Source of the DNA: Cycas panzhihuaensis
Taxonomy: Eukaryota; Plantae; Cycadophyta
Length of the DNA stretch: 64,000 bases
Assembly (NCBI GenBank): GCA_023213395.1
Contig: CM041465.1
Coordinates: forward strand, 250,115,741-250,179,740
Direction: 5' to 3'
Part shown: positions 3,531 through 32,399 of the stretch, piece by piece
How the letters are laid out: each line of letters begins with the position of its first letter
Position numbering within the stretch: position 1 is the stretch's first letter
Notes under the pieces: generated by a model
Seen by the model: only the letters and a program-made list of their open reading frames with translations
The model's database searches: none
What the model was told of the DNA's origin: nothing
Translations under genes and position numbers: made by a program

Positions 3531-4702
3531 TATGGTCAACTTTCTTCTCCATCCCATGCTGGAAGTTTGGTCTTGGTTATTCTGGTTTGCGCCACCTTCG
3601 TTTTGGGACAAGAGACATAGAATACATTGTGCACTTTGCTACTTAGCAGTAGATTGAGTTGGTAGGCTACTTCTTCTGCTTTGTCTAGTATGCAATATGG
3701 TTTGTAAAACCACGGTTGCAATTTGAGTCTCTTTGTCTACTTTAGGGTAGATTGTATGTATGGTTGAAGCCTCAAGAATACCTAATTTCCTTTTGCAAAT
3801 GATCTTTTTAACTTATGTAAATCAACTTGTTGCTTTAGGTGGTTCCTTATTAAATTGATATAGTCTTTCAAAATTTGTAATGTTTAAGCCATTTGTTGCT
3901 ATTGGTCATGTACTATAGCTATGTGGGAGCTATTTTCTCATGTGAGGAGGGATGGGGGCTCCTAATCATATAGTGCTTGAAAGGGTGTCATCTTTGTTAA
4001 AGTGTGATAGGTGGTTTTGTACCACCATTCAACTAGATGTAATCGTTTATGCTAGTGTTGTTGCTTGTCACATGAGAAATTTTGAAGATAGCCTTCCAAA
4101 CATTTATTAATTGCTTTTGTCTGACCATTTGTCTGTGGATGATAAGTTGTGCTCCTTGTGAGGATAACACCTACCTGTCGAAACATCTCTTGTCGAAAGT
4201 TGCTTATGAAAGTCATGATCACTCACTATTGTTAGACTTTAACATGGAAAACAATTATCATCCACAATAACAATATCAAAGACCAAAGACGAACTCAACA
4301 TAATTAGAATACCAAAGCACCCAAGACTCAACATGAGCCTTGATGATTACATCATGACATATACTACCTCGACCACCTTTATATACAAAATAGGTGGGAG
4401 GACCTACAAGGCAAGTAATACATGTGGGACAATACCTTTATCCTGACCAATGACATTACACCAACTAATTTGACCAATAAGCTTCTATCCTCTCATACAA
4501 TATTATAATGATAAATGACTCTTAGACTCTAAGACTTAGGACTATGACTATTAACCTAAGATACACAACATTAAACATTATACTCTAACACCTCCCCTTA
4601 ATGTTTAATGTCAAGACTACAAAAGTGACTGAATACTAAAGACTAACATGACACTTGATAATGGACTTAGGACATTAAACATGACCTCCAAGGGACTTTA
4701 AT

Positions 4703-6385
4703 TTAATCAACATGTACTTTGCTTTCTTTGAATTTACAATGTCTTGTTCTTGGAAAGGTCTTGAACACAATGCCTTGGACTTGATTCTGGTCTTCAATCC
4801 TGTAATGTCGCCTCTGGAGCAGTCCCTTAGAGTGACGGTTCTTGAACTTTGTCCTTTTTGTCTTCACGTGCAATTGGGAACCCTTTATCACACAAAATGT
4901 GTAGTAGATCAAGCTTGAGCTAATTTGTGCTTGGTGAGGACCTGTTAGGTGTTTTTGCATGTACTTATCAAAGGTGTCTTCAAGATGTATATCAAATATG
5001 TCTTCCATTAAAATTCTGGTTTCCACCTGTTTGCTTATACTTTTTGTATTCGGTTCAACATGCTTATCCGCTTCAACTTGGTCACTTGAAGTAGCAGAAT
5101 TTCCTTCATCATCTTGCTTACCTGTGTTAACAACAGAATTGTTTTCCCTTTCAAGACTCTCTTCCACTTGTGCAGGTACTTGTTCTGAATCAATAAGATA
5201 CTTTGTTTTATCTTCATTACTCAAGAGATCCTTTGTCATACCAAATATGATAAGGATTTCTGTTGGGATCATATGTATGTACCTCCCAACATAAGAATAG
5301 TGTAGTATCTTAACATGATTGCCTCTCTTGACCAAGTATCCTGCCCATACCATACAATAATCTTGGTAGGCAAGACTTTGATCAAATGATACTCCAACTA
5401 TGTTCTTCCTTCTTTTGAATGAGTCTTCTAAAACCAATGTAGGATATATTAACACAGTTTGAATTCTTTCAAGGATAAGTGCAGAAAAAGCTACCATGTT
5501 AAATGTTGTCATATAAAGTCTTGTGCATATGTATACAACAATGTAACCTGAGAATGTTTGGAACCTGGCAACAAATTTATCAACATAGAATAAAGTGATA
5601 TAATCCACACTTTCCACCAAGTCAGTTGAATTTCCATATTGAACCACCTATAATAGATCAGTTTCTGAATTTTCAACGTTCATCCTTTCACTCTTTCTTG
5701 TTAGCGTGCTGAAACTCAAGATGTTTGATGCGATAATTCTCTTATCAACCTTTGGTTCTTTATTTTCATCTTCTTCCTCAGATCCTAAGCAACAATCTAA
5801 GGTTAAATCTCCAATAAGTTCATTTGCAGAGATTGCTTTGTCACAACAATTGTATTCATTTATTTTTTCATCAACAGAGAACCTATTTTCAGAAACAAGT
5901 TCACATACTTTTTCACCTTCCTTATCATCAAATGAATCTATAAGAGATTTACTCTTACAAAAACTGACCTTCTTACATTTATCCTTTTTGATTTTCTTCT
6001 TCAATTTCTTTTTTTGATTTTTTGTCAGGTTACTGTGCACAACCTACACTTCTGCATTTTTGTTGCCTTTACCTTTATTCATTGGTTGTTGGTTTGTCAG
6101 CTTGGAATCAAATTTCTCTTTTATGAAGTTCCATGTTTTGTGTGCCCTACATGTAGTATTTTGGGTGAGCTAAAAAATATCACTGAATTTTATGCAGCCT
6201 CCTTGTGTGGACATGACAGAAATCCATTGAAATGCAGATGTGTCCTTTTGTTCCAACACTGGTGAAGCATCATTGTATCCTACTAAAACAATCTCCCATA
6301 AGCCAAGGGAGATGAGCCAGGACTTCATGTTTTCTGACCATTCTAAATAGTTGTCTTCTGTCAATAGAAGATGTGTATGACCCAT
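4703..6385 (-). pseudogene. Shrunken, highly diverged Copia gag-pol relic (gag N-terminus, integrase-like and RNase H-tail-like segments)
   Basis: LTEDNYLEWSENMKSWLISLGLWEIV is a Copia gag N-terminus. ORFs 6040-5648 and 5647-4703 are in the same frame, separated by one TAG. LIYPT..SFKRRKNI..WAGYLVKRG..LIIFG resembles integrase PYTPQQNG.AERKNR..WAEA...YL.NR..LRVFG. The C-terminus LHVKTK..EDQ..FKTFPRTRH resembles the RNase H end. Confidence 0.65.
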
Positions 6386-7176
6386 TTTGATAACTTTACA
6401 ACCAAACTGCTTATTGTGAACTTGAAATCAGAAACTCAGGAGTCAAAAAGATATCAATAAATACGGTATTGAACCCTTAGACAGATTACGGAATAGATGT
6501 TTGAATGCAGAGATACAAAATAGAACGTATAGAACCTTCTTTTAAACTATTATTAGATCTAGCCTTCAAAACACGACCTTGAACAATAGAATTTATCGTT
6601 GTTGGGGTCTTTTCAATACAAAAGTGTTATCTGTTTTATCAAGTAAACCTTTCTTCGTATAGAAGGCTGAGATTTAGAGGCTAGTATTGTTCGGAAAGGG
6701 CCCGTATCTTCTCCGTGTTTGCTGGAACTCATCTGAGTACTTGTGAGACAAGGTGTTTTTCCAACTGCATCAACCAATTGCTCCTTTGAAAGATTCAAGT
6801 CAGCAAGATTAAAGTGCCTTCAATATTTCAGTTATTTCTATTGTCATTCCATGCAAAAAGGATTACCATACTGACTTATAAAGTTGCAAATGTTAGAAAT
6901 TAAATTATGGTACTTGATTTCCTGGAAGTTCACTACACTATTTGTGGATATCAACCAGTGCCAGACACGGAGAACAAAGACTTTCTTCACAACCCACGTA
7001 GACCAATTAGAGCAGATTTTCCGTTGCAAATAATTTCAGAACATCTAGGTTTCGTCTCCCATGGTACCATGACCAAACTACAAGGCACTCATGAACTGTA
7101 CCATTGACGAAAATTTTGCTTACGGATGACATTCTGCTTACTTTCCAAGGCACTCATAAACTGTGATGATGAATGG

Positions 7177-7398
7177 ATCACAGGATCGAACACAAGTCTC
7201 GCCAAGTCGAGTGCTTGCTTAGATTATCGCGGCATATGGAAGCTCTTAAAACCGCTTTGGAGGATTCTCCTATATAGGGGCTTGTCAACTGGAGATAGAC
7301 CAATCTTGTAATCAATGCCTTCGTCTTCATGAAAAGTCGATGAGAAAGCGTGTCTAGTGCATTATGCGTGCCCTTGCGGAATCATCAACACTATTTAA
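7177..7398 (+). pseudogene. ARPC5: Captured, internally deleted fragment of host Arp2/3 complex subunit 5, antisense to element A1
   Basis: RIEHKSRQVECLLRLSRHMEALKTALEDSP is joined directly to LYRGLSTGDRP..CNQCLRLHEK...CIMRALA..INTI* (with frameshifts), matching plant ARPC5 N- and C-terminal blocks. Confidence 0.88.
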
Positions 7399-7455
7399 CT
7401 TATATTTCTGAAGTGATTATTTCTGTGAAGTCTCCAATAGAAACAATCATCAGAA

Positions 7456-7498
7456 GATGAATGCCTTTGTTTTCATGAGAAGCTAGCAGAAAAACCTG
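7456..7498 (+). pseudogene. ARPC5: Second short ARPC5-like fragment
   Basis: DECLCFHEKLAEK resembles ARPC5 DQCL.IHEKLTEK; nucleotide similarity to 7312-7350. Confidence 0.6.
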
Positions 7499-8261
7499 TG
7501 ACATAAACATAGCGGGTCTACTACTCCAATAAGTGCACAGGACCAAGCCGCCAGGTATACCCAACTTATGGACAATCTATGGCTTCAGCAGTGCTTCATC
7601 GCAGATCTGTTATCATAAATTTCCACAAGAGCATCTTCACAATCAACCGTGCATAGAATAGGCTTAAAGGCGGGTATCACCTCACGATCTCCTTTAACTA
7701 GTACAGAAAAAATGGAGGCAAGCACGACAACTGTTTTAATAGAAATGAACAGATTGCACGGATCTCAACAATGAAGTTCCAATAGGTAAGTCTTCAACTT
7801 ATCATGCTCACAATGTCACGAACGGAATACAATTCCTTCTCTTAGGATAACCTTGCTCTGAGCCAACAAACCCTTAATATTCTAACACAATCTCCTAAGG
7901 ACAAGAATGAAGCCTTAACTCTCACGGTTAAGGTAAATTCAACAACCATCAATTAAAAAACTCCATAATCATTTCCTTATAGCAAGATAAGGAACAAGGT
8001 TACCTAGATAGAATTCCTGTTTCATATCAACACTTGGCATGCTTCATATCAACGATGACTTTGAAACTTTTCTTCAATCTGGCACCCACTTGATGGAGCC
8101 ACCTCCTCTCTCAATCTTCTTCTTACAACAGGATGTCCTGGAACTTCACTTTCTCAATTTAACTCTTCAATCTGACAGCCAATCTAACGGAGTTGCCTTC
8201 CTCCTTTATCAAAGAGAACCTGCACAACAATAGCCTTAACAAACAACCTACTCTGATACCA

Positions 8262-8619
8262 TGTTAGACTTTAACATGGAAAACAATTATCATCCACAAT
8301 AACAATATCAAAGACCAAAGACGAACTCAACATAATCAGAATACCAAAGCACCCAAGACTCAACATGAGCCTTGATGATTACATCATGACATATACTACC
8401 TCAACCACCTTTATATACAAAATAGGTGGGAGGACCTACAAGACAAGTAATGCATGTGGGACAATACCTTTATCCTGACCAATGACATTACACTGACTAA
8501 CTTGACCAGTAAGCTTCTATCCTCTCACACAATATTATAATGATAAATGACTCTTGGACTAGACTTAGGACTACGACTATTAACCTAAGATACACAACAT
8601 TAAACATTATACTCTAACG
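8262..8619 (-). repeat. 5' LTR of element A1
   Basis: Direct repeat of 4230-4590, adjacent to the PBS. Confidence 0.93.
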
Positions 8620-11583
8620 ACTATGACCTTGGGAAACCCATGTAGCTTACGGATTTCCTTGATGAATGAGTCAACTATTTGGCTTGCCTTAGCTATTGAT
8701 TATGCACATACTTTTTTAATTGATCTGCTACTACAAAAATTGAGTCTTTTCCTTTGGATTTAGGAAAGCCTGTGATAAAGTCCATCAATATTTCTTCCTA
8801 TTTCTGATATGGAATATGTAATGGTCGAGGTAGCCTTGGAATCTTGACATTTTCGCTTTTGTGTCCTTGGAAAATATCACATTTCGATACGAATTTGTAG
8901 ACATCCATTTTTAACCCTTTCCGATAAAATGTACGGTGAATCTAGTGATATGTTTTGTTGATGCCCAAATGTTTTGACAAGGGTTTAGCGTGGGCCTCTT
9001 GGAGGAACTTGTCCTTGATTGTGGACATTTGAGGGATAAAGATCTTTGCTCGATGTAAAATTAGATCGTTCCACAACTTGTACTCTTTTTGTGTTTCTGT
9101 TGGATTTTTTGGAGTATCAATTGTGATGTTGGATCTTCCTTGTATTCTTGTACCAACTTGTGTCCAACTGGGTTTGACCACTGAGATAGCCTAGAGCATT
9201 GATTGTTATAGAATCCTTGAAAGTGCATTTGCAATGACATTTCCTTTCCCTTCTTGTAGATGATGTCAAAATTGAAGGATTGTAACTTGCTCACCTATTT
9301 TTGTTGTTCATTTGATAGGGACTTTTGATTGAGAAAATACTTGAGATTGGCATGGTCAGTTTTCACCAAGAATTTGCTCCCTAATAAATATTGTTGCCAT
9401 TAGTGGGCGTGGATAATTGCAAACATTTCCTTGTCATAAATATTTTTCAAGCATTCCCTCATGCTTAATTTCTAACTTTCATATGCTATGGATTGATTGT
9501 TCTAAAGAAGAACTGCTTCTAATCCCACTTCAGAAGCATCACACTCCAAAACTAATGGTTCACTAAAATTTAGCATGGCCAACACTAGAGTCATGACCAT
9601 GTGTTCTTCAATCCTAGAAAAGCCAGTTGTGTTGGATCGTGCTAAATGAATGCTTCTTTCTTTATGAGGTTCGTCAGTGGTACTGTAATGCTTGCATATC
9701 CTTTGATGAAGTGTCATAGGAATTTGGCTATGCCTAGAAAACTGTTGAAATGCATGATATTGTTTGATGTAGGCCAATTTAAGATGGCTTGGACCTTTTT
9801 GGGGTCCATCTTAACTCCTACCTAGGTGGTGATATGACCCAAGTATTCTAATTTCATTTGTCCAAAAGTGCATTTGGACTCATTTGCGAAGAATTGGTTT
9901 TCTTCCAAAACCCACAATACTTCCTATAGATGTTGTAAGTGGTTGTCCCATGTATGACTATAAATTAGAATGTCATCGAAGAATATTGAGACAAATTTTC
10001 TAATAAATGGCCTAGGTACAATGTTCATAGTACATTGGAAAGTTGCAAGCGTATTAGTCAATTTGAACAACATAACCCAAAACTCAGATAACCCTTCATA
10101 TTTTCGAAACATTGTCTTGTACACATCTTCTTTTTTGATGTGGATTTGATAATATCCATAGTAGAGATTGATCTTAGAGAAGAATTTGGCGCGATGTAAT
10201 TCACCCAACAAATTGTCAATCCTAAGTATCTGATACCTATTTTTGACTGTTATTTTATTCAAAGTGCAGTGGTCGATGCACATTCAATATGATCCATCCT
10301 TTTTCCTGGCCATGATAATTAGAGAGGCAAAAGGACTAGAATTGGGCATGGTGGCTCCTTACTATAACAAATCCTTGGTAATTTGCTCTATTTCATTCTT
10401 GAAATGGTATGGATGTTTGTTAGACCTGATATTTATTGGTGCAACACCTGGCACTAGCCGTATTGCATGTTCATTGTCATGGGATGGAGGTAGGCCTTTT
10501 GGAATGTCTTAAAAGACTTTGTTGGGCCGGTCTATGAGAGCTTGGATTTCAGATGGAATATCTTGTATGGAGATTTTATTGTAGGACATGAAGAAGGCTG
10601 AGGGATTTTTTTTGAGCAGTTTCTACATGTGGTGAGGTGAGACTAGCTATGAAGGTGGTGTGGGTGGTTCTTGTAACTTATATTTATATCCTTTCTGGAA
10701 GAAGCTCATGAATTGTGTTATAATTTGTGACTTATGTTACCAAGATTCTAAAGCCGTGCCTAACACTATGTCAACACTATCGATAAACATGGCAAACATA
10801 CATGTGCTTAATGACTAGTAAGAGATTTGAAGGTGTACCTTATCACAAAATCCTCTGTATGGCATATTGTTCCCATTGGGAATTGCTACTTGGAATTGTT
10901 TAAGTAGCTTGACTTAGAGGCCCAACTTGACTACCGTTGGTTTGTTGATGAAATTATGTGTGCTGCCATTGTCTACTAGCACTGATACCTTGGAATTCTT
11001 GCTGTTCACCTCAAAGCATAGCATTTGAGGCGTATTAACCATTCTTGTGATCGCCTGCAGTGATATTTAAACATTCTCTAGCCCTATGTGATTAACTCTT
11101 CTATTTCCACTTCATACTCCTTTGGTGACTGCATCACTTTTGGTGGCTCCTCTTGTATTGGTATATCCACTTCTTTGTTGTTAATCATAAGGACTTTCTT
11201 TTCTAGACATTTATGATTTTGACTCCATTTTCCATTTAGTCGAAATGTGTTCCCCTTTTTAGATGTTCCGCTTTTGATAACCTGCCTTCCATGGGTCTTC
11301 TTTCCTTCTACTTCCTGAGTGGTGCGTTGGCCTTGGCTCCACGCTAGTACCATTTGGTCTATTGCCTATCCCATATGTCTAGAGCAGACATCTCGACGAA
11401 CAAAATTTTGGCACATTCTTATGAATTCTACTTCTATGTTGTGTGCTTGTCTGATTGTTTCCCTTAGAGATTCTACACCCAGTGTTTTTAGATGGAACTT
11501 GATAGTCCCTTTGAGGCCTTCAATATATGCTTGAAGTAGTAAATTAGGGTTGATTTTAGATGTCAATAAGCTTTGTAGATTTT

Positions 11584-14500
11584 AGATATAATATTGTTGG
11601 AGTTTTGAAATAAATGTTCAAATCAACTTGCAGAGGTGGAGTCCAACATCCTCCTAAATCTTTGATTGTGCACTGTAACATGTAGAAGGAACGATTTTAA
11701 ACCAAAATTTAGATGATAATAGATTAGGCCCCTAGCAATAATGGGTCAAAGTCAGATTTTTGATTGCTAGTTCTTGTAGTAAGACCTAAGGTGGGACCTT
11801 CTGTGGAAAAGGCTCCTACGATGCGCAATCATTTGGAGAGAAGAGTTAGTGCTGATTTCTTGAAGGACTAGATAATAGGACCAATGATTGTGTTTTTCTG
11901 TGATCTTTGTAGATGGACGTGGTAAGTTCTTCCTCCCGTAGGGTGGGCGAACCTCATCCAGATGAAGTTTCTATTCTATCAAAGAAGGCATGGCCTATAT
12001 TTGGGGGTTCTTGCATCAAGCATAAGCGACCTAACCCTTGCATTGTTATCAACCATAGTTATCTTTTTGAAGATTTTTTCGCTCTCTCAGTTGGAGGGAT
12101 AATATGTCGATTCTTCGACCTTTCGCCTTTGCCTAAGAGCTTGATATCCTATATTCGAGCCAATTGGATGCCTCGTACTTCCTAGGAGCTAGACATCCAT
12201 TGTGTGGGTTGGGGTTTTTTTGTGGTCATTCAAAACCTCATAGGATAGGAATGTTGTTTTTGAGAAGGGCTCATGGTTTATGGCTCGAAGCAGTTTGTGC
12301 ATGAAATACTAGGATTCCTCCTTCAACTTGAGACAAGAGATCCCAAACACAATCCTAGTGTGGGTTAAGTTGTCATTCTTTCCCCTTCATTTATGGATCT
12401 AGAAATGTTTCGAGGTTGTCGACTCATCTATTGGGCACTTCGTGAGGACTGCTGAAGTCACAACTCAACATAAAATCACTTCATTTGCTTGCATTTGTAT
12501 TGAGATTGATGTATCTGAAGGTCTTGTTGACCAAATTGAAATAGTTTTGGGTGATTGCTCCTAGAGGTAGGACATAGTCAACGAGCAAGTATCGTACAAA
12601 TGCAACTTGTGCCACCAATATGGGCATTTACTGCATGATTACCCAAAGAAAATTTTAGGACCAAAAGTTCCACCCAATCAACACCCAATACATTCCATGG
12701 ACTAGGCAAAGGATGATGGATTTGTTCCTATTCAAAAGAAATCTCGACATAGACTGGGCAATAGGAACAAGACGAATTTAAGGAGCAACCAATAAATTTC
12801 AAGCTCCATTAGGTTTAAACGATCCAACAACCAATGTCAGCCATAAGTTATAACCAAAAAAGAATTTATATAGCTCAGAAGAGGAAGCAGACAACTAAAG
12901 TGCAAAGAATTAGACCAACTCATCATCTTCTCTTCGCTTAGAGTCACCCTCATCACAATCTCCAAATCGACCACACACTGTAGAATTGGTACCAGAAATG
13001 TAGGACCCAGATTATAGTGATGTTGGAACAGTCAAGGAAGACACACCCAGGGTCAATGTAGTAGGAGGACCAATTAATACATGGATAGGCATTAAGTCAA
13101 TGCCGGTTAATGTGACCAATATAGACTATGGCGAGATAGAGAAGAAGAAACAGGGTAGACCAACCAATAGGGATATCCATACCAAAGAGGCAACACAAGC
13201 GGTGGAAAGTGATAGTCATCCCCAACTGCGAATACTCTAGGACAAGATCATTGTGGACAATCAATTGGTTCAAATCCAAACTCTTGGAGATGGAAATACC
13301 AAGGCCACAAAAATTATTACTCGCTAGGTTAGAAGATGATCATTGTGTCCTAGAATATAAGAGGTTTGGGCTTGTCCTCGGCAAAAGGAACCCTAAAGGA
13401 AAGGATCAGGGAATGGTCTCCTGATGTCCTCCTCTTACCAGAGACCAAAATGACAGAAGAAGAATTAGCATATTGGAATAATTCTTTGGATGGCAACAAC
13501 TACTCCGTTAAGAGTGTTAGTGCTAAGGGGCATTAGGGACGTATTGTTATCATCTAGAATAACAAAGCCCTCCAATTGATAGGTATGATTAAATACGGAC
13601 ATTGGATCAGATGCAAATTTTAGTGGGGTAGGATTTGATAGAGAATTTAATGTTACAAATGTATGTGGGCTGAACATCCCTTGCATGTCCAAATCATGTT
13701 GGAATGAGATTGCTCAAGATGGTTGTGCTGACCACCCCCAAAATTGGATTATGGGAGGTGGCTTTAACCTCATCCTACATCCTAAAGAGAAGTGTGGTGG
13801 ACGTTTCTCTATGAATCCTAATGCTAGATTACTTGCTAATATCATGGTAGAGAACAACTTAGTGGATGTTGAAACAATTAATGACATGTACACATGGTCC
13901 AACAAAAGGTATGACTACTCCTTGATCATGGAAAGGCTTGATCAGTTTCTAGTGTCGAAAACAATTATAGACTACATTAATGTGGAAGCCAACATTCTAC
14001 TGAGGAGTAGATTTGATCATGCTCCCATTCCCTTAAAGTTGCATGTTCCTTCCAAGTGCAAAAATTCTCCATTTAAGTTTAATCTAGTTATGATTGAAAA
14101 TAAGGGCTTTCTCCTCCTTGTCCAGAAGTGGTGGGAAGAGGCTCGAGAGACATGGGTACCAAGACATATATATTCCACTCCAAAATGAAATTTGTCAAGA
14201 ATAAGATTAAAGCATGGCAGTGAAGTGTTATGAACCAAGCCAAACAAGAACTTTAGAATTTGAAACTAAAAACCCTAAATGACAAGCTAAACATGGGAGA
14301 AGATGGTTCCTTAGACAATAGGAAGTGGCTTTGAGCATGAAGTTGGAATCCATGGAAAAGGAGAATGATGCTCTTATTAAACTAAGGTCTCACATGCTCT
14401 AGGCAAAATTAAGAGACATGAACTCGCGCTTTTTCGACAAGGAGCTTAAAACCCAATAACTTGAGAACAAAATTGTGGAGTTTAAGGACATTGAGGGGAT

Positions 14501-17993: not shown

Positions 17994-19115
17994 AAACTTT
18001 TTAGATTTTGAAATTCTTTTGTGTAAGTTTGGTCAATGCTTGTCTTTTGTAGATGCATGAACTAAGTGAAGTAATCTCTGCTCCAAGTGTTCTCATATTG
18101 TTCTATCAATGAGGATTTTGAAAAATCTTAGTTGTAGTGTTTTGTTCCCTATCAATCCTTGCTCCACCAATGGAACCATTTGATTGCTTTCCCATACAAA
18201 TGAAGAGATGCTACCAGTATTTGGTCCATGTCTAATATGGGGTGCATTTGGAAATGGAAATCCATTTGAATGATCCAACTTTGCATATCCCTTGGCTTAT
18301 TAAGGTCAATTTTTTTTGAAAGGAGTTTGGAGTCCTTCAAACCATAGTCGGACCTAGGTCTACCATTTCTATCTTCTCTTTCCTTGCCGTGGTAAGAATT
18401 ATCCGTATTGTTGGAAGGCCCTTTGTCGTCAATGTTGTTGTCAAGCTTGGGCCTTTTTAATAAGCTTTGTACAGATTTACTCACATCCTCCAATTGTTTC
18501 CCAAACTTGTTGAGATGTTTTCCCATTTCTTCCTTTTCATTTAGTTGATTTCCTACACCATTCCTTATTTTGTTATGCTTTTTAACCATTTCAATGTTTA
18601 AAGTATCCACTCCTCTGACAATGTCTCCTACCATGACTGAAGAGTGGTTTACCATTTTGCTTGGCGCAAGTGTTCTACCAGATCTTAATTCCATTCTAGG
18701 AAAAACGTTTGGCCCTTTTAGACACTATGGTCCCTCTGGAATTTGCTTATGGACTGTTATTTGCAGTGTACTGCTCATTGAAAAGTGTGTGCAATCTGCT
18801 AAGGTCTGCTAAAATCTGCTTGTTGCATGCTAGAAATGATTTTTTTTATCTGTTGAAATATGATTTTGACCAACGACTTCTGATTTTTGTTTAACATAAA
18901 TTTGTATACTGATGAAAAAAATCATAATTTGTTATCGTAGAAATATGATTGTTGATAGATAATTTTGACTTTTGAATGCAAAAATTTGTCTTTGACAGGA
19001 ATTTCAAAGTTGTGAGTATAAAAATTCTGATTTTTATTGTTGAATTGAAGTGATTGACTGCTGAAAATTGATCATCAGAATTGAAATGACCCCGATCACG
19101 AGTCTCTGAGACCAC

Positions 19116-19600
19116 TTATGGGAATCCCAACAGGGATTCACACCAAATTAACCAAAAAACGCATAGATCTATGCTATTTTGCAAAACAAGTCTAGATATA
19201 CCATGCAATATTATAACAAAATTTGAGTGAAATATAATACAACTCAAGAGTTTGCTGAAGACACTAATCATAGAAATAATAATGACAGTTCAATATTATT
19301 CACCAAAATGTCCAAAACATACAATCACAGTGTCCCCTCTTCGAGTTGAGGTTTCCTCCCAAAACAGATCCCACTAGGGCCAAAAATAGCAGACTGGATT
19401 ATCTTCCCTTTGATGATTTTCAATTAGGGGTAGGATGCCCTATATATAAGTGAAATGAAAGTTTAAAGTTAGAAGTTGGTTTCAGTAAATGAAGTCAGCC
19501 AAAATTAAGAGAGAGAAGAAGTCCAGATTTAGGAGAGAAAAAAAAATGAAACGTAGAATGTTAAGAGCAGAGGTCGACTTAGCAATTAGAGGAAATGCTA
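19116..19600 (-). repeat. 5' LTR of G1
   Basis: Direct repeat of 2859-3348, adjacent to the degenerate PBS tctctgagacca. Confidence 0.85.
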
Positions 19601-19602
19601 TG

Positions 19603-19796: not shown

Positions 19797-19847
19797 GAGC
19801 AGTTGGGGATGTATTTTATTTTTAACAAACAAAAAGGGTAATTGACC

Positions 19848-20730: not shown

Positions 20731-20833
20731 TACTAAAAATTTGAGAATCAATAAGCTTAATAAGATGTTTTCCATGGAAAACTATTTTTGTGACATCTTA
20801 TTTGTTCATGCATGCTCCGCTCGGCCTTAGGAG

Positions 20834-22145: not shown

Positions 22146-22208
22146 GAAAAGGGTTCAGCATTAGCATCTTTTGCTGCTAAAACTTTGGACAGCTCTCTTA
22201 CTTGGAAG
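22146..22208 (+). CDS. HAOX: Peroxisomal (S)-2-hydroxy-acid oxidase (glycolate oxidase family, HAOX-type), internal exon
   Basis: AG/GT bounded; EKGSALASFAAKTLDSSLTWK. Confidence 0.88.
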
Positions 22209-23308: not shown

Positions 23309-23378
23309 GATATCAAATGGTTGCAATCAATTACAAATTTACCTATTTTGATCAAGGGAATACTTACTGCTGAAGATG
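23309..23378 (+). CDS. HAOX: HAOX/GOX exon
   Basis: AG/GT bounded; [23 protein letters not shown]. Confidence 0.93.
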
Positions 23379-23610
23379 GTTAGTATTTTCTGTTCAAGTT
23401 CCTATTCATTCTCAGTTTTTTTATTTTGAATTTGAAGCTTAGGGTGCATTTCCACAAACTGTTATGTTAGTCATTTGGTACACAGCTACTGAAATTAATT
23501 GAAACATAAGAGTTTGTGAGAAGCTGTCCCTGGTCATATGAGCATGTTGAATTTGAAAAGCTGGAAATTATGAAGGCATACTAATTTTCTATTATATTCA
23601 TGTTTAACAG

Positions 23611-23711
23611 CTGAATTGGCCATACAAGCTGGAGCAGCTGGGATAGTTGTCTCTAATCATGGAGCACGTCAGCTTGATTATGTTCCATCAACTATTGATG
23701 CTCTTGAAGAG
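23611..23711 (+). CDS. HAOX: HAOX/GOX exon with the active-site SNHGARQLD motif
   Basis: AG/GT bounded; [34 protein letters not shown]. Confidence 0.96.
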
Positions 23712-25825
23712 GTTTTGAATAGATTTTAAACATAAAGCAAGTATTTTCTAATTATTTGCAACAGCTACAAACATGGTGCAGGCTATGCACACAAGAAGTA
23801 CCCTCCATAACATGAATGATCTGTTCTCCAACCACCTTGGAGACAGTGCTGCTTACTTGATCAAGGGAACTTGTAGGGTGCATAGACTACACCTAAAATC
23901 ATGCACAAAGAGCATCATAAACGAAGCAGTTAACTGTTATCAAGTGTCAAGTGAATCAAATTGCCAAGAATTAACTAATGTCCAAAAGCATTCATTCGTT
24001 ATGATTTAGAATACTTCAGGTTGTTGCCAAACCAAATAAACACCTCCAAAGACCACCACTTGTGACAGCAGCAGAGTGTCAAAAGAAATAATTATGTGGA
24101 TGTTCATCATATCAAAAGCGAATGAATTGTATCCATCCTATCCATGCATCTAAATGAAAGAAAGAAGTAATGTATAGGGAGAAGATGAAGCATGGCAGTC
24201 AGGGGAATGGACCTCCAATCTAAATAACGGTTTGCATGAAGTGTTCAACATTTATTGAATATTATTTTACCATGATCCAACTTCTTCACAGGACATTTGA
24301 GAAAGTGGATGCATTGAATCCTTTCTCTGGGCAATCATCTATGGTGATGGTGCATTAGGTTAGCAGGCAAGACTTTCTGTGTGAGAGTGAGAATAGCACA
24401 TGTAGTAGATAAGAGATGCAGCAATGCTTATATGATTGTGAGCATCTAGACCATCATTTCCAAGTTTGTAGTAACCCCAAAAGTTAGTGGCCTCGATGGT
24501 TCCAACCAATTGCTACATTTCGTCGTGTACCTAATACAGGGACTATAAAGGAGACAGCATAATAGATACAGTATCATAGCACTCTAGATTTCTGGGGAAT
24601 TGACAACTAGTGTCCCAAATGATTACAATGAGAAATAAACACATTGAGATGAGCAATGAACCTATGTACACCATTCAGGAAATAGATGCATCATGGCAAG
24701 CCTCGGGTACACTGCTGCTTTTAAATATTTTGGCAGAGGTTGTACCAGCTGTACCTGATCTCTTCCTTCATTGGTTTTCCTGACTATCTCATTTCTTATT
24801 TAGCCCTGCTTCTTGTTACCAACAGTCGCCGGGTAACCAATATCTGAGCACCAGAGATCTCTATGGGCTGAGGATGTTAAATGTTGTTTTACCTCAATCT
24901 AACTATAGTAAAAGCTATTGAAAAAGTTCATACAATCTATGGGCACCTTGGTTTTGGTTAGAGAGAGTTGTTCCATATGGGAGTCAATACTTTATAACAT
25001 AGATAGCAGATGTAATGGTGCTTGTGTGTTCATAACAATCATTCCAAAGTTTGTTACAGGCTCCAAGAACTACCATCAGACCAATGCTCTCTGCATTTTG
25101 TATGTGTGAAAAATATCTACTAGCTATATCTAATATTGATGCTAAACAACTCTCACCTGGATAACATTGTAGATTATCAAGCACTACATGACTAGTGCCC
25201 AAAGATTGCTAGAGTAGTTCCCAAGAATTTGATACATAGTGATAAGCCTATGGCACACTATCTGGGAAATAGATATATCACCATGATCCTTTGGTACAAT
25301 AGTACCCAGAAGATGAATACAGCCTCCCCCACATGATGGATTCAAGATTCCCGATGTTCAAGAAGGTTACAAGATGCCTGAGGTTTTGCTACCAGCAAAT
25401 ACATCTTGAATAAGTCTTCGACACATCTTCCCCAGGGGGGGAATAATGACTCATTGTGAATATATTAGCTCCTATTAGCATAGAAAAGCAATGGTGCTTC
25501 TTGTGCACCCGTGAATCTGTACCAGGATACCATTGTGAATGTAGTCTCCAAAACAAGGTGCATTTCACTCTTTCCAGTATCTCCTAAAGCCTATCTGACA
25601 AGTGAGATGATTCATCAGTTCAAGACTTGCTTGATTTTATGTGTATCAGGAAAAAATGATGAGTATTATGCTGAAAACATTGCTTCCTTTTGTCCTTTCT
25701 TCAAATGTTTATTAGTGTGATTTTCTTATGTTTGCTCAAATGCTTGTTTTATCTTGGGAATGATTATCAATAAGGAACATATACCATCAACTGAGAGATC
25801 TACATTGTAATCTGCTTTCAAACAG

Positions 25826-25930
25826 GTTGTCCAAGCTGTGCAAGGCAGAGTCCCTGTACTTTTTGATGGGGGCATCCGCCGTGGTACAGACATTTTCAAA
25901 GCACTGGCTCTCGGTGCACAAGCAGTTCTG
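25826..25930 (+). CDS. HAOX: HAOX/GOX exon with the FMN-binding DGGIRRGTD motif
   Basis: AG/GT bounded; [35 protein letters not shown]. Confidence 0.96.
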
Positions 25931-26150
25931 GTCTGTCATCTCATATTTTAACCATTTTGAGATTCGTCAAGTTCCATTGCATTGCATGCTCTTTTACATG
26001 TAAATCCACACAATTTTTTATATATGCATATAAGACAACACAAGTTCTCATATACATGAATACATATAAAGAGGCTTGCCAAGCCAGTTCATGACTTTTT
26101 AGAAACTGCATACCTTTCTCACGTTCTGTAATGTTATTATTCTATTGCAG

Positions 26151-26330
26151 ATTGGAAGGCCTGTAATCTTTGGCTTAGCTGTAAAAGGAGAATTGGGTAT
26201 CAAAAAAGTGCTACAGATGCTTTTTGAAGAGTTTGAACTAACAATGTCACTTGCTGGTTGTCAAACTGTCAAGGATATATCTAGATCTCATGTTCAAACT
26301 GAGCGAGATAGAATAAGGTCAATGCTGTGA
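26151..26330 (+). CDS. HAOX: HAOX/GOX last coding exon with PTS1-type SML
   Basis: [14 protein letters not shown]...[11 protein letters not shown]...[15 protein letters not shown]; phases are consistent across all five exons. Confidence 0.95.
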
Positions 26331-28203
26331 TAAAATTTCAAATTTTATCTCAACCATATCATGCAGAATTGGCCTCAAGGGAAGAGTTTATATTTTCAGT
26401 ACTTGTAATTCTTTCAGTCTCACTCATTTTTAATGTGTTCATTTTAGTATTTGGTGTGGATGCCTTTGAATGGATCAAAAGGACAATCATATCAAATTAC
26501 GTGTCTTGAAGATGATTCCTTGACATTAAAATCTCATAAAATTCTCTCATATAAGTGCCTATTGCGGTTGTAGCTGGGCGTAAGATGCATGTACCTTCCT
26601 TTCACCCACCGTTCCAACTATATGATTGTCAAAACCCAAGGAAAATGGGGTTGCTTTTATAAGATGTTTAATATACCATGAATGGCTTTACTTAATGCTA
26701 GAATCAGGAATTTTCAAGCTTGCCGCAAACTAATTTATTGGTCTCAAATATTTTCGTATAACTTTCTCTTAAACTAGTATCCAAGTACAAAATCATTTTA
26801 GAATTAATTTGCTCATCAATTGATTTATTGTCTATATGAAGTTATTGAATACTAGCTTCAGGATCAGAAATTCCATAAGCTAACTCATATTTTTCATTTT
26901 CCTTATTAGTATACTGTTAGAGTATAATGTTTAATCTGTGTAAAGTGTGTCCTAGGATTAATAGTCTTAGTCCTAAGTCTTAGAGTCAGAGAGTCATTAT
27001 AATATTGTGTGAGAAGATAGAAGCTTATTGGTCAAGTTAGTTGGTGTAATGTCATTGGTTAGGACAAAGGTATTTGTCCCACATGCATCACTTGTCTTGT
27101 ATGTCCTCCCACCTCCTTTGTATATAAAGGTGGTTGAGGTAGTATATGTCAATACATCATTAAGGCTCATGTTGAGTCTTTGGTGCTTTGGTATGTTTTC
27201 TGATTATGTTGAGTTACTCCTTGCTCCTTGATATTGTTATTGTGGATGATGAATGTTTTCCATGTTAAACTCTAACATGGTATCAGAGCAGGTTGCATGC
27301 TAAGGTTGTTATTACGCAGGTTCGCCACCATATCTATGATAAGGAAAGGTAACTCCGTTAGATTGATTGCTAGATTGAAATTCCAGGTTATCCTACTGTA
27401 AGATGAAGATTGAGAAGCTCAGTGAAGGATAAAGCATTCAAGCAAAGAGGTGGTTTCATCAAGCCATTACTAGATTAAGATCGAATTGAAGAGAAGTTCA
27501 AGGCTTTACTAATTCAAAGTGAGCCACTGTTGGTGTGAGAAAGAATTTCACCAGGTAATATCACTCCCTTGTTGCATTATATATATTAGGGTTTATCCTA
27601 AAAGTCAAGGCCAACATGTATGGAGAAATAATGACTTTTGAAGTTATATGAGGGATTGATATTTGGAGGATATTCATTGGATTTGTACTCTGGCTATTGT
27701 TGCATGTCTATAGAAATATGATTGCCAATATTTATTAGTTGCTAGCATTAGTTTAAGGTTTGGTAAAATCTTAACTTTGGCAATGTTATAAGTGTTGAGA
27801 CAAAGAAGGTGTTGGTTCTGTGTGAAAGATTTATGGTCATTTTTGACTTTGAATGTCCACTAGTGGACAACGTACCCTACGCAATAATTCTGCTTTGTCA
27901 GATTAAGCTGAAGATAGCCGCCAATGTATTAGCCCTATCTCGAAGAAAGACCTGAATACACAGTTGCCAGAGTCATTCTGGGTGCCACCAGTGAAGAAAT
28001 AAACCACAGTACAGTCCTTGATGTGCAAACGCTGGGGTGTTAACCTTCTGCAATCCGGCTCCACCTCCTGTCTGTGATCCACACTTTTCTTCACAGCCTC
28101 TACAAAAACGTGAAGACAACGATCGTGTCGGTGGATTTAGACTTTCTCCTGAGAATTGCATGCTTTTGACATTAGATCTGAGTGGAAGGAGAGGCTATAG
28201 GTG

Positions 28204-28339
28204 ACTTCCTGCTCTAAGGGATGTTGTTCTCAATAGCAAACTCCTTGTGAGCAGTCATGCTGCTGGGACATAATTACTAACTCTTGCACGTCTTATCACT
28301 TTATTCAAGTCTTTGAACTTCATGACTGATTGTACCTGG
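28204..28339 (-). pseudogene. ALDH2: Captured fragment of a host family-2 aldehyde dehydrogenase, antisense to element A2
   Basis: VQSVMKFKDLNKVIRRARVSNYVPAA*LLTRSL...LRAGS resembles ALDH2 PVQSILKFKDL.EVIRRAN.S.YGLAAGVFT..L.....RALRAGT. Confidence 0.78.
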
Positions 28340-29187
28340 AGTTGTGCTTGCTTGGTAGCTTGCCCTCAAGTTGCATCCACAGAATTACAAGACTTGGCCA
28401 TAGCATTTCTCATAAATATTTGTGCGGGTTGTGCTCGGCATTCTAGGAATCAAGAATGATTCAAACATAAGGAGGGGCTTTGTTCTTCCATAGTCTCAGT
28501 CTAATGGTGCTAGAATACTCACAGAGAGACAGGGAATGTAGATGAGCACCTGCAAGAGGTCTGGGATGCATGGACAGAATGGAAGATAGCTTGGAGGCGA
28601 TTACCCTTTTGTCTGGTTTTATCCAGCAGTAATAAGATATTTGGCCTATTTGTACTAGGTGCAGCATTGAATGTCCAGATCTGTTATGTGATTCCAAAGG
28701 CGCCTGCCTTGTGGTTGTTTTGACCTAGGCAATATTCCCCACAACGTGGTCCCTCCAGTTTTGGAGGCTCTCAGATAGAGCACTAGCATTGACCATTGCA
28801 TATGTGGTTTGAGATGTTGGTCCAAGCAGACAGTTTGGGATGGTTGTTACCATATGCATGCTTTGCAGTTTGGTGATCACTAGTCTTGCAGCCTTTGGGA
28901 AACTTTAAGGTTCCAATGCTTGTGGCCTCATGGCATTATGGTGTGCTGATTTGTGAGCTTTGAGCTGCTTTGGGTAGTTATGAGGACCCAAGCCTAAAAG
29001 CTTAGGATTGAAGTTGTTGCATTTGTGCTTATGATGTATTGATCTTGCAGCCTCTGGAGTATGGTATATGGCATATGTGCTTTGTAATATGATTTAGGGT
29101 AGCTGGAATCAGGAGTTTGAAACTTGAGACAGGAAGAGTGGGTCTTGGCTGAGATCATGCTCTTGTGTTTTTTTCTGTAATGCTGAT

Positions 29188-29370
29188 ATCTATTATCTTG
29201 AATGGTTTTCTATCATTACCTCTTGCTACAGTTGCATCAAATGTGGTAGTCTCAGGCCCATGTGGAGTCACGCAGTTGTGGAAACTTGCGCCTCCTGAGG
29301 GGTCACCACCCTGATCAAATAAAACTTTATTGAAAGGACATAATTTCTTCAGATCATACTTGAAGGGCAT
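29188..29370 (-). pseudogene. HGO: Captured, internally deleted fragment of host homogentisate 1,2-dioxygenase, antisense to element A2
   Basis: PFKYDLKKLCPFNKVLFDQGGDPS is joined directly to GGASFHNCVTPHGPETTTFDATVARGND..PFKI, two HGO blocks that are normally tens of residues apart. Confidence 0.9.
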
Positions 29371-29823
29371 TGAAGTGTATGAGGCTGTCATCGAATCCTT
29401 AAGCTCTTTTTGAACTGCTCAAGACACGAGTTTAAGGCGTGAATCATAATCAAGACATCATTACTATAAGTGTATTGACTACAATGAATTCTGTTTTGAA
29501 GGCAGGTCATTGGCAGAGTTGATCCTAAAGTGAGTTGGTGTCGGTCCTCTCATTGATCTGGTTGTGGAGGTAGCTGACACTCTTGATATCATCGCTGAAA
29601 TAAGATATCAGGCTTACAGTCTATGATTCTCATGTACAGCCAGTAGGATGTGATGGCAGATCTAGAGTTCCAAAAAAGGTGCTCTTATGTATCGAGGTAT
29701 TTTTTGCAATAATGGATGTATGAACTTGATTGACACATATAGAAAATTTCTTCCCCGAAAACACCAAGATTGGTCTATTTTCATTTTTTAAGGCTGAAGT
29801 GGGTATTCTTTAATTCATACGAC

Positions 29824-31400
29824 ATGGAGTTGAGTGACGTCATAGTTTTTGTGACGGAAAAAAATGAATACTGGTTGACAGATCTTCCTTTTCCTTTGCC
29901 CAAATATATTGGAACTAATTTTTTTTTTTGGAAAATTAAGGAGAGCATATTCATACTAAAGAAACTTTGGAAGACAATTATTGGTATTGAAAAGGCTCAC
30001 GAAGAAGGGGAGGAAGCTTTTAGAAAGAAAAATAGAATAGCCATTGACATAATGCTTGCAACTTTTGATAAGGGCCATCTTCCTTCTCCTTATCACTTCC
30101 TTGTCCGATCTCTTTAAAACACCAACTCAGCTGAAGACGCTTGGAAACTGCTGACAGAAGTACATGAAAAAGGACCTGAAGAAGTGCAAAGGTGTATCAA
30201 AAGGGCAAAGAACCAAAGGAGGAAGATGAAAAGGAAAGTCAAAAAATAACTTGATTCTGGTAAGGAAAATTCTCTCGTAGATAAACAAGAGGCTGATAAT
30301 TTCTGCCCAAAATCTGATGAAAATTTGAGTGCACCAAATGACCTGAGTCTCACCAAGATGACAGGAGACTTCACACCTGGGATTGCTGAAGTTGAAGAAT
30401 CTGAACCACAATCTTTGCAGATAATTCTTCACGAAAACACGTGCATACTGACAGAAGGTATGGGCAACATTGTCCTAGTTTGTGTTTACAGGTTGGTAGC
30501 CAGAATTCAAATGATGACATGATATACAGTGATATGCATATATTGTAGACTATCCATGATTACTTTCAATTCAGTTGCATCCTGTATTCTCATCTTTGAA
30601 AGAATCAAAATTATGACAACATATCCTACAACAACACTAGAAAGTTGTTTTAAAGAAAGAAGGGACATAGGCAGGATATTATATGATCAAAATCTTGTTT
30701 GTCAAGATCATATTACATTTTGGGTAGGTTACTTAATCATAAAGGTCAATCATATTGAAATAATGTTCCATCTCTGTATAACCATAATCAGGAAGCATGT
30801 ACATGTAGGCATCATGAAAATACTCATTATACTTTATTCAAGGAATCTCGAGTGATATGGAGAAAATAGGGTATCTTGCACAGCCTACAGGTAACAATGA
30901 TGAAGCAATTAGAACTCATCTCAATGAATTCATTGCTTCTGGGGAGGATGATATTATCTCACCACTTGATGACTTATCATTATATTTGGTTAAATGATGA
31001 TATTGTCAACTTATCTCTAATTGATAACATTTATCACTCATATGCTAAAGAAAGCAGAAGCAAACAGATGGTGATCAGAATTCTGATAGAAGACAAGACA
31101 TATTTGATGTACACCTTGAATATGCTTTTAATGAGTACATGCAAGGTCAACTGACAAGTCTATACCAAGTTCAAGTTGAACTAGCCATGATTCACTACTC
31201 ATTTTGCATGAGAAAGGATTCCAAATTGTATATAAAGATAAATGAGGCAAAGCTCGAAGACCATCAGTCTAAATGACTACTTCAAAGACGACACCGCAAG
31301 AATGAAGACAAAAATCAAGGCGAAAACATTGTGTTCAAGACCATTCCAAGATCAAGACGCTGTAAATTCAAAGCAAAGTACATGTTGAGTCCATTGAAGG
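29824..31400 (+). pseudogene. gag-pol relic of element A2, homologous to 4703-6385
   Basis: gag-like FWKIKESIFILKKLWKTIIG; YCRLSMITFNSVASCILIFERIKIM.YPT..LESCFKERRDI..DQ.L.CQD...WVGYL aligns with the A1 ORF; shared C-terminus VFKT.PR.R.CKFK. Confidence 0.7.
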
Positions 31401-32399
31401 TCATTTGTCAAGTGTCATGTTAGTCCTTAGTATTTAGTCATTTTTGTAGTCTTGACATTAAACATTAAGGGGAGGTGTTAGAGTATAATATTTAATGTGT
31501 GTCCTAGGATTAATAGTCTTAGTCCTAAGTCTTAGAGTCAAAGAGTCATTATAATATTATGTGAGAAGATAAAAGCTTATTGGTCAAGTTAATTGGTATA
31601 ATGTCATTGGTTACGACAAAGGTATTTGTCCCACATGCATTACTTGTCTTATATGTCCTCCCACCTCCTTTGTATATAAAGGTGGTTGAGGTAGTATATG
31701 TCAATACATCATTAAGGCTCATGTTGAGTCTTTGGTGCTTTGGTATGTTTTCTGATTATGTTGAGTTACTCCTTGCTCCTTGATATTGTTATTGTGGCTG
31801 ATGAATGTTTTCCATGTTAAACTCTAACACATACTTCACAGTAGTTTTGTGAAGATTATCAACCTCTTTAGGAAAATCATCATTAATAGTAGTTCTTGTA
31901 TCAGCATGAGTTGTTTAAACTGAGGGGACCCATTACAATGCTCCACTGTCTAAAGGTGGGGTTTGCGCATGACTGATCATATGCAGCCTATGTTTTGGTC
32001 GGTTTCACCTGCCTACTTTCAATGATACTCACAAGGTCCATGAAACTCTCTTCTTATAAGACCTACCCATTATCAATGTTGCATACTGGTTATTAGCATT
32101 CACAACTCATCAGCATGTGGTGAAGTGAAAGACCATATCACATCATTACAAAGCATATGATAGGATTCCACAACCATTATTGTATCGATGAAAAAAATAT
32201 TACAATATTACATGAGATTCATCTCTCACACTAGACAAGTGAGTGTTTACCTTTTAAACATAATCAAGAGTCACTTTACATTTGTGTCACCCTTCATACA
32301 TACCCTTACAATATGACCATTACAAGATATTATAATGCATAATGACATACCAACTAATCTCTTTAGTAATCCATAGCACTAGCATGCAGTTGTACGCTT

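What the first reader, a model, noticed from the sequence alone, without database searches (positions are those of the whole stretch)
4230..31829. Non-autonomous LTR family carrying variable cassettes of antisense host-gene fragments
Seen: elements A1 (4230-8619, minus) and A2 (26915-31829, plus) share ~360-bp LTRs, PBS, a ~270-bp leader and a 3' gag-pol relic. The ~1.3-1.8 kb between leader and relic is not visibly homologous and is a mosaic of short gene-like pieces. Recognisable pieces are ARPC5 (two) in A1 and ALDH2 plus HGO in A2, and all four are antisense to the element transcript. Known: LTR elements can transduce host mRNA by template switching (maize Bs1), and TE-captured gene fragments can yield siRNAs matching donor genes. 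Inference: this family has a fixed slot that accumulates different host fragments with a consistent antisense bias, so it could be a mobile source of antisense RNA or siRNA against unrelated housekeeping genes. Four fragments is a small sample for an orientation bias.
Basis: partly seen in the sequence, partly recalled or inferred. Interest (0 to 1): 0.9.

Follow-up and report, generated by a model that had tools for sequence, protein, structure and literature searches.

The report
Copia relics carrying antisense host-gene scraps
Two decayed copies of a very abundant plant retrotransposon family carry dead snippets of ordinary host genes, inserted backwards in their untranslated leader; such gene capture is known, but the backward orientation and fixed position could show how it happens.

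Summary
A1 (4230-8619, minus) and A2 (26915-31829, plus) are real, separately inserted LTR elements of one Ty1/copia-derived, pol-less family. They have 357-363 bp TG..CA LTRs, an initiator-Met-type PBS, a PPT, 5-bp target duplications and LTR divergence K about 0.03. They share the LTRs (85%), about 140 nt of leader and a 3' block. The stretch between does not align.

Of the claimed cargo:
- HGO is confirmed twice and is antisense. It has an internal deletion (HGD residues about 323-378 missing).
- ALDH2 is probable: the best solved-structure matches are all ALDH1A1, but E is only 0.24.
- ARPC5 got no support from any tool and rests on recollection.

Contig depth in three related species puts the family backbone at thousands of copies. 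The cargo modules reach only tens to hundreds, and each module has its own abundance. So fragments were captured in sub-lineages and then amplified.

Three capture events, all antisense, are not a significant bias. No expression or small-RNA evidence exists, so the regulatory idea is untested.

First readers of this scan noted the same antisense leader cargo in many other windows of this genome, and one sense-strand case. Those notes are unchecked.

Verdict: a new variant of known LTR-element gene capture. The mechanism is interesting if the bias holds genome-wide.

The parts
8262..8619 (-). A1 5' LTR (first base mutated T>C). The target duplication ATAGT lies at 8620-8624 and 4225-4229.
8250..8261 (-). 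A1 primer-binding site, TGGTATCAGAGT (initiator-Met tRNA type)
   Evidence: the tRNA assignment is from general knowledge of plant Copia elements
8109..8249 (-). A1 conserved PBS-proximal leader, shared with A2
6428..8108 (-). A1 cargo zone. No similarity to A2 or to the rest of the window, and no terminal inverted repeats.
7177..7503 (+). ARPC5-like pieces, antisense to A1. An N-terminal piece (7173-7274) is fused to a C-terminal piece that runs to a stop near 7395. A second short piece lies at 7441-7503. Identified by eye only.
   Evidence: translation. No tool support.
6173..6427 (-). A1 Copia gag N-terminal relic (DUF4219)
   Evidence: E 2.4e-6; E 0.001 against the B1 gag N-terminus
4706..6043 (-). 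A1 open frames of 131 and 314 aa, in the same frame as the gag relic. They have no known domain. The 314-aa part is homologous to A2 30421-30834 and 31094-31372.
4230..4589 (-). A1 3' LTR, with the PPT AAGGGGAGG at 4590-4598
26915..27277 (+). A2 5' LTR. Target duplication is TATAC (26910-26914) and CATAC (31830-31834).
27278..27415 (+). A2 PBS (27278-27289) and conserved leader
27416..29797 (+). A2 cargo zone. It is made of modules with different abundance in related genomes. A 716-bp stretch (28471-29186) is absent from some copies.
   Evidence: depth table; joint 28470>29187
28258..28365 (-). ALDH2-family-like fragment, antisense to A2. Weaker by-eye similarity continues towards 27906.
   Evidence: 8 of 8 best PDB matches are ALDH1A1 residues 404-426, E 0.24
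29188..29376 (-). Homogentisate 1,2-dioxygenase fragment, antisense to A2. Two collinear blocks match HGD 299-322 and 379-406, with the part between deleted.
   Evidence: HgmA_C E 2.8e-6; 1ey2 E 3.2e-5
29798..31466 (+). A2 high-copy backbone: a gag-like relic (by eye), a K-rich stretch, and the block shared with A1
   Evidence: depth rises about 100-fold at 29798
31476..31829 (+). A2 3' LTR, with the PPT at 31467-31475

Best explanation
A1 and A2 are old, dead, pol-less derivatives of a very abundant Ty1/copia family, mobilised in trans. Their long untranslated leader holds passively carried scraps of processed host mRNAs. The scraps lie between the conserved cis-acting part next to the PBS and the gag relic.

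Inferred origin: the scraps were copied in by reverse-transcriptase template switching inside the virus-like particle. They were then multiplied along with the sub-lineage that carried them. That would explain why each sub-lineage has its own mosaic.

Inferred position: the zone is the one internal stretch where extra sequence is tolerated.

Inferred orientation: a fragment that is antisense in the element's plus strand cannot come from the classical minus-strand switch onto a co-packaged mRNA, which gives sense inserts. Two routes remain:
1. Plus-strand DNA synthesis, running from the PBS towards gag, switched onto host mRNA.
2. Capture was unbiased, and sense inserts were lost because they bring poly(A) signals, splice sites and start codons.

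Shown: the element anatomy, one solid antisense gene fragment with an internal deletion, and different copy numbers for cargo and backbone. Inferred: the RNA origin, the switching step, and the cause of the polarity.
For: - Complete LTR-element anatomy with separate target duplications.
- No pol domain anywhere; a gag N-terminal relic only.
- HGO fragment on the opposite strand, confirmed by two libraries. HGD residues about 323-378 are missing, as expected from an intramolecular template jump or a skipped exon.
- ALDH-like core on the same strand.
- No inverted repeats or other DNA-transposon ends around or inside the cargo.
- Summed contig depth in three related species: flanks 2-5, LTR 28,000-123,000, backbone 1,100-34,000, cargo modules 0-1,000 with module-specific levels. 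Some copies lack 28471-29186.
- Stop codons are depleted only on the antisense strand of both cargo zones: 89 against about 106 expected, and 91 against about 110 expected. The sense strands are at expectation.
- Three other Copia elements in the window (B1, B2, C) also share the LTR plus about 230 nt of leader, then differ over 0.9-1.3 kb, then realign before gag.
- A review states that transduced genes in LTR elements are usually in sense (PMC7264820).
Against: - Only one of three gene identities is statistically solid. ARPC5 has no tool support.
- Three events cannot establish an orientation bias.
- No donor gene was available, so absence of introns, junction microhomology and poly(T) tracts could not be checked. 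No A or T run marks fragment ends.
- Depth summed over contigs is not a true copy number. It may include donor genes or unrelated repeats.
- Poly(A)-signal counts on the two strands (3 against 7) are too few to support the filter idea.
- B1, B2 and C show the variable zone, but no gene hit was found in the B2 zone by Pfam. B1 holds a tandem array, and C was read by eye only.
- One unchecked first-reader note reports a sense-strand mosaic elsewhere in this genome.
Confidence: 0.65

Rival explanations
1. The family is a selected, mobile source of antisense RNA or siRNA that regulates unrelated housekeeping genes.
For: The orientation would give RNA complementary to HGO and ALDH mRNAs if the element is transcribed. 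TE-captured fragments are linked to epigenetic cross-talk with donor genes in maize and conifers (10.1101/777037 abstract; PMC13477047). One run guessed to be RNA has contigs over the LTR, the leader and, thinly, the cargo.
Against: The fragments are short, about 87-88% like the best contigs laid on them, and broken by frameshifts and deletions. They differ between copies, so no particular target is conserved. No listed run is on record as RNA, and the one 'RNA?' run may hold DNA. No small-RNA data could be examined.
Confidence: 0.1
2. Capture happened at the DNA level. Either another gene-carrying transposon (Pack-MULE, CACTA, Helitron) nested in the leader, or filler DNA was patched in during break repair. 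The elements later amplified.
For: Such transposons are the main gene capturers in maize and rice (PMC2774510; PMC13317346). Most of the cargo zone is unidentified sequence. A 716-bp stretch is present in some copies and absent in others.
Against: There are no inverted repeats of 14 nt or more and no flanking direct repeats in or around either cargo zone. HGO shows a coding-block-to-coding-block join without intervening sequence. Repair filler would give random orientation. The same zone varies in five elements of two families in this window.
Confidence: 0.12
3. A1 and A2 differ mainly because of recombination between distant Copia lineages, by copy-choice between co-packaged element RNAs. On this view the 'variable cassette' is ordinary fast-evolving leader, with one or two chance acquisitions rather than a capture-prone slot.
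For: Similarity falls from 85% (LTR) to 68-78% (3' block) to 62% or less (gag and K-rich part). The unaligned stretch includes gag relics, not only cargo. The B1 variable zone is a tandem repeat, not genes.
Against: In A2, depth falls about 100-fold exactly across 27470-29797 and returns at 29798. This indicates inserted modules, not mere divergence. At least two different host genes sit in one zone.
Confidence: 0.1

Closest known systems
Maize Bs1 and other gene-transducing LTR retrotransposons
   Same: A pol-less LTR element carrying pieces of several unrelated host genes between the 5' LTR and the remaining element sequence, then amplified by retrotransposition (PMC13317346).
   Different: Per the review read, the Bs1 fragments became a transcribed and translated chimeric gene, and a second review says transduced genes are usually in sense. 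Here the fragments lie on the opposite strand, are non-coding wrecks, and differ between sub-lineages.
LTR-mediated retroposition by template switching (Tan et al. 2016, PMC5131818)
   Same: Host mRNA copied into an LTR-element cDNA by reverse-transcriptase template switching.
   Different: There the retrocopies are transcribed more often from the same strand as their parental genes. The model I recall is a minus-strand switch, which gives sense inserts. Antisense inserts need another step or a filter.
TE-captured exon fragments in gymnosperm giga-genomes (PMC13477047)
   Same: Mass capture of coding fragments by TEs, Copia included, followed by amplification. About 400,000 fragments per genome are reported.
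   Different: That study reports no orientation or position analysis ('antisense' and 'orientation' do not occur in its text). It finds that most host TEs carry a single fragment.
Antisense additional ORFs of Grande, RIRE2 and Retand (PMC7264820)
   Same: Sequence on the antisense strand inside an LTR element.
   Different: Those are conserved family-wide ORFs between pol and the 3' LTR, without host homologues. Here the pieces are host-derived, sit in the 5' leader, and vary between copies.
Pack-MULE / Pack-CACTA cargo
   Same: Mosaics of fragments from several host genes carried by a non-autonomous element.
   Different: Those are DNA transposons with terminal inverted repeats and genomic (intron-bearing) cargo. 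No such ends are present here.

Membership tests
Ty1/copia LTR retrotransposon (non-autonomous derivative) | Direct LTRs ending TG..CA with a 5-bp target duplication | tested here: met
   TGTTAGAG..CTCTAACA. Duplications ATAGT/ATAGT (A1) and TATAC/CATAC (A2).
Ty1/copia LTR retrotransposon (non-autonomous derivative) | PBS next to the 5' LTR and polypurine tract next to the 3' LTR | tested here: met
   TGGTATCAGAG(C/T) and AAGGGGAGG. The match to the initiator-Met tRNA 3' end is from general knowledge and was not aligned here.
Ty1/copia LTR retrotransposon (non-autonomous derivative) | Copia-type gag | tested here: met
   A1 6173-6427: DUF4219 E 2.4e-6 and similarity to the B1 gag N-terminus, E 0.001. 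For A2 by eye only; Pfam blank.
Ty1/copia LTR retrotransposon (non-autonomous derivative) | pol with integrase before reverse transcriptase | tested here: not met
   No protease, integrase, RT or RNase H signal in any stop-free piece or against the B1 pol. Hence non-autonomous; superfamily assignment rests on gag and PBS.
Gene-transducing LTR element of the Bs1 kind | Host gene fragments inside a complete LTR element | tested here: met
   HGO. ALDH-like is weak. ARPC5 is unconfirmed.
Gene-transducing LTR element of the Bs1 kind | [quoted passage not shown] | tested here: not met
   HGO and ALDH-like lie on the minus strand of the plus-strand element A2. They are broken by stops and frameshifts.
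Gene-transducing LTR element of the Bs1 kind | Fragments derived from spliced mRNA | tested here: inconclusive
   HGD blocks 299-322 and 379-406 abut without spacer. No donor gene was available to place introns.
Pack-type DNA transposon cargo | Terminal inverted repeats and target duplication around the cargo | tested here: not met
   no inverted repeats in 6300-8200 or 27300-29900.
TE-borne antisense/siRNA regulator of host genes | Transcription through the cargo, and small RNAs matching the donor genes | not testable with these tools
   No listed run is on record as RNA. The single reads call returned contigs only.

The most novel reading that the evidence does not exclude
In this large plant genome, Copia-type elements capture host mRNA by a polarity-specific step of reverse transcription. 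Plus-strand DNA, growing from the PBS into the leader, switches onto host mRNAs and back. The result is mosaics that are almost always antisense and always lie between the PBS-proximal leader and gag. This would be a capture route distinct from classical minus-strand transduction.
Probability: 0.3. Interest if true: 0.8.

Novelty: new variant of a known kind. Interest (0 to 1): 0.55.

Why it matters
Gene-fragment capture by LTR elements is known, and is massive in giga-genomes. How the fragments get in is less clear. The reviews and genome papers I could read do not analyse where the fragments sit or which way they face. One review states that transduced genes are usually in sense.

A consistent antisense polarity at one position would be a footprint of the step of reverse transcription at which host RNA is copied. 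Alternatively it would mark a strong filter on what a retroelement RNA can carry. Either can be tested directly with the genome sequence.

It would also predict that thousands of element transcripts are complementary to host mRNAs. That bears on the reported epigenetic conflict between captured fragments and their donor genes. Taken alone, this window supplies one solid and two soft examples.

Tried and rejected
PROTEIN IDENTIFICATION
- Every stop-free piece of 35 aa or more, on both strands of both cargo zones, went to Pfam. Only HgmA_C and DUF4219 passed.
- ARPC5 pieces: PDB, the representative library (52, whose only hit P0001 is a repetitive unrelated protein), the word-index search and the Atlas were all blank.
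- The word-index search was equally blank for the confirmed HGO piece. Its silence on ARPC5 therefore says nothing.
- Looking for sense-strand cargo: protein-like pieces on the A1 sense strand (7588-7764, 7403-7576) gave nothing in PDB.
- Further ALDH pieces gave nothing.
- The A1 314-aa ORF has no Pfam domain, no database relative and no Atlas hit. It shows no significant similarity to the pol of the neighbouring Copia B1 (37). 'Gag-pol relic' is therefore unproven for the shared 3' block.

COLLECTING MORE COPIES
- Two exact-pattern scans of metagenome contigs found nothing.
- The protein route failed.

OTHER CHECKS
- Rfam and tRNA scans of the window were blank.
- No poly(A) or poly(T) tracts at fragment ends.
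- Poly(A)-signal and ATG counts by strand are uninformative.
- Loose ends at 27305 in the reads table looked like a breakpoint. They turned out to be the same leader in diverged form.
- Organism names were coded, so the species was not identified.
Full report
THE ELEMENTS

Repeat finding and BLAST confirm two LTR elements at the stated places. A1 lies on the minus strand, with LTRs at 4230-4589 and 8262-8619 (96.1% identical). A2 lies on the plus strand, with LTRs at 26915-27277 and 31476-31829 (94.8%). Kimura distances between the LTRs of each element are 0.032 and 0.029, almost all transitions.

Both have TGTTAGAG..CTCTAACA ends. A PBS reading TGGTATCAGAG(C/T) follows the 5' LTR directly; from general knowledge this is the initiator-Met type usual in plant Copia elements. 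The tract AAGGGGAGG precedes the 3' LTR. The 5-bp target duplications differ between the elements: ATAGT for A1 and TATAC/CATAC for A2. These are therefore two independent retrotransposition events, and the assigned orientations are secure.

WHAT A1 AND A2 SHARE

- The LTRs are 85% identical.
- Similarity continues through the PBS and about 140 nt of leader, to A1 8109 and A2 27415, with weaker similarity for perhaps 50 nt more.
- It resumes at 78% in A1 5043-4590 and A2 31051-31476.
- At protein level it resumes further upstream: the A1 314-aa frame matches A2 30421-30834 and 31094-31372.
- Only a 62% low-complexity match links the parts in between.

No pol domain is detectable in either element. 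A1 keeps a Copia gag N-terminus at 6173-6427 (DUF4219, E 2.4e-6). It also matches the gag N-terminus of the neighbouring Copia B1 (E 0.001).

The gag relic, a 131-aa frame and a 314-aa frame all lie in one reading frame. None has a relative in Pfam, the protein collections or the Atlas. Calling the shared 3' block a gag-pol relic is therefore unproven.

THE CARGO

I searched each stop-free piece apart, by reference. The step of joining frameshifted pieces was left out.

HGO is solid.
- The piece 29158-29418 on the minus strand hits Pfam HgmA_C above the curated cut-off (E 2.8e-6).
- It also hits human homogentisate dioxygenase 1ey2 (E 3.2e-5). All three matches listed at E up to 1 are that enzyme.
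- Two collinear blocks match HGD residues 299-322 and 379-406, with nothing between.

ALDH2 is probable. The piece 28258-28365 (minus) aligns over 23 residues with ALDH1A1 residues 404-426 in all eight best solved-structure matches. However, E is only 0.24, and Pfam and the neighbouring pieces are blank.

ARPC5 has no tool support at all. By eye, three short segments on the plus strand of 7177-7395 are collinear with what I recall of ARPC5 and end at a stop, and a fourth lies at 7441-7503. A recollection is a lead, not a test. I put the identity at about 0.7.

The word-index search was also blank for the confirmed HGO piece. That search therefore cannot count against ARPC5.

No piece on the element-sense strand of either cargo zone matched anything.

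ORIENTATION

All recognisable pieces face against the element. They amount to three capture events at most, because the ARPC5 pieces are one event. The one-sided probability under no bias is 0.125.

An annotation-free check points the same way but is weak. Stop codons are depleted relative to base composition only on the antisense strands: 89 observed against about 106 expected in A1, and 91 against about 110 in A2 27858-29800. The sense strands are at expectation.

HOW THE CARGO RELATES TO THE FAMILY

Contigs of three low-coverage DNA runs from three coded organisms, plus one run guessed to be RNA, were laid on 26500-32300. Flank contigs match at about 98%, so the DNA organisms are close relatives or the same species.

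Summed word depth by region:

| Region | Summed depth |
|---|---|
| Flanks | 2-5 |
| LTRs | 28,000-123,000 |
| Backbone 29798-31349 | 1,100-34,000 |
| Conserved leader | 1,200-7,900 |
| Cargo 27470-27857 | 430-890 |
| Cargo 27858-28633 (ALDH part) | 40-255 |
| Cargo 28634-29021 | 0-210 |
| Cargo 29022-29797 (HGO part) | 135-1,000 |

Some contigs join 28470 to 29187 and so skip 716 bp.

Summed contig depth is not a copy number. Even so, the pattern is clear. The backbone is orders of magnitude more abundant than any cargo module. Each module has its own abundance, and each is far above single copy. The simplest reading is that modules were acquired stepwise in sub-lineages and then amplified with them.

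The cargo zones contain no inverted repeats or flanking direct repeats. They have no similarity to anything else in the window. They hold no known RNA or tRNA.

THE SAME ARCHITECTURE NEARBY

Three further Copia elements lie in the window:
- B1 (37974-45316, minus) has near-complete gag-pol.
- B2 (52821-60355, minus).
- C (50727 to the window end, plus) is interrupted by B2 and lacks RT.

They share the LTR and, for B1 and B2, about 230 nt of leader. They then differ completely over 0.9-1.3 kb and realign before gag. The B1 zone is a tandem array. The B2 zone gave no protein-family hit, and the C zone showed nothing recognisable by eye. A variable zone in the leader is thus general here, with or without recognisable genes.

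MECHANISM

Shown: the anatomy, one antisense gene fragment with an internal deletion, and cargo rarer than backbone.

Inferred:
- The fragments come from processed RNA, copied by reverse transcriptase.
- The position reflects tolerance. The PBS-proximal leader is conserved, presumably for priming and packaging. Gag needs its start. Only the stretch between is free.
- The polarity is informative. A switch of the growing minus strand onto a co-packaged mRNA gives a sense insert, which a review describes as the usual case (PMC7264820).
- An antisense insert requires that host mRNA was copied by the plus strand as it extended from the PBS towards gag. Alternatively it requires an antisense RNA template, or unbiased capture followed by loss of sense inserts.

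My counts of poly(A) signals on the two strands (3 against 7) are too small to help. No T runs mark fragment ends.

WHAT IS KNOWN

- Capture of gene fragments by LTR elements is established: Bs1; 425 maize elements, none with more than one gene (PMC2774510); rice and sorghum (PMC3726574).
- It is reported at about 400,000 fragments per gymnosperm genome (PMC13477047).
- Neither that paper, nor the rice and sorghum survey, nor a 2026 review (PMC13317346) analyses orientation.
- I found no description of antisense, leader-located mosaics. My searches cover open-access text only.

OTHER WINDOWS

First readers of this scan noted the same pattern in many other windows of the same genome, up to 179 Mb away. 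One noted a sense-strand mosaic. These are unchecked AI notes by similar readers. I treat them as a lead that the pattern is genome-wide, not as evidence.

VERDICT

The structural interpretation holds in outline. The orientation bias is unproven from this window. The regulatory inference is untested and unlikely for such decayed, copy-specific scraps.

Noticed in passing
window 37974-45316 (minus): B1 is a near-complete Copia element. It has RVT_2, integrase, gag-pre-integrase, a zinc knuckle and gag, and its LTRs are 96% identical. Its leader holds a tandem array with units of about 43 and 80-85 bp at 43792-44195.
   Followed up: partly
window 50727-64000 (plus) and 52821-60355 (minus): Copia element C is split by the nested Copia B2 at 52821/60356. 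C also lacks the RT-RNase H part (B1 39677-38560 has no counterpart), and its PBS is mutated.
   Followed up: partly
window 43627-44533, 58385-59585, 51290-52605: B1, B2 and C share the LTR, and B1 and B2 share about 230 nt of leader. They are unalignable over 0.9-1.3 kb before realigning ahead of gag. This is the same variable leader zone as in A1 and A2, but without recognisable host genes.
   Followed up: partly
window 4706-6427 (minus): The A1 gag relic, a lysine-rich 131-aa frame and an uninterrupted 314-aa frame lie in one reading frame. The 314-aa part has no relative in any library searched. It is too long to be open by chance in AT-rich DNA.
   Followed up: partly
window 28471-29186: A 716-bp stretch of the A2 cargo is skipped in contigs from two related organisms, with 9 other letters in its place. 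This is a presence/absence difference among cargo-bearing copies.
   Followed up: no
window 29493-29656: A 4,468-letter contig of a run guessed to be RNA matches this cargo stretch at 87%. It may be a donor transcript for an unidentified fragment.
   Followed up: no
window 18152-18694 (minus): An ORF with weak Ty3 capsid similarity (E 8.5e-5), suggesting a Gypsy-type remnant between A1 and A2. A 185-bp repeat links 3075-3259 with 19332-19516 (85%).
   Followed up: no
window 1528-1936: An inverted repeat with 148-nt arms (78% complementary) 113 nt apart. It looks like a hairpin or a MITE.
   Followed up: no
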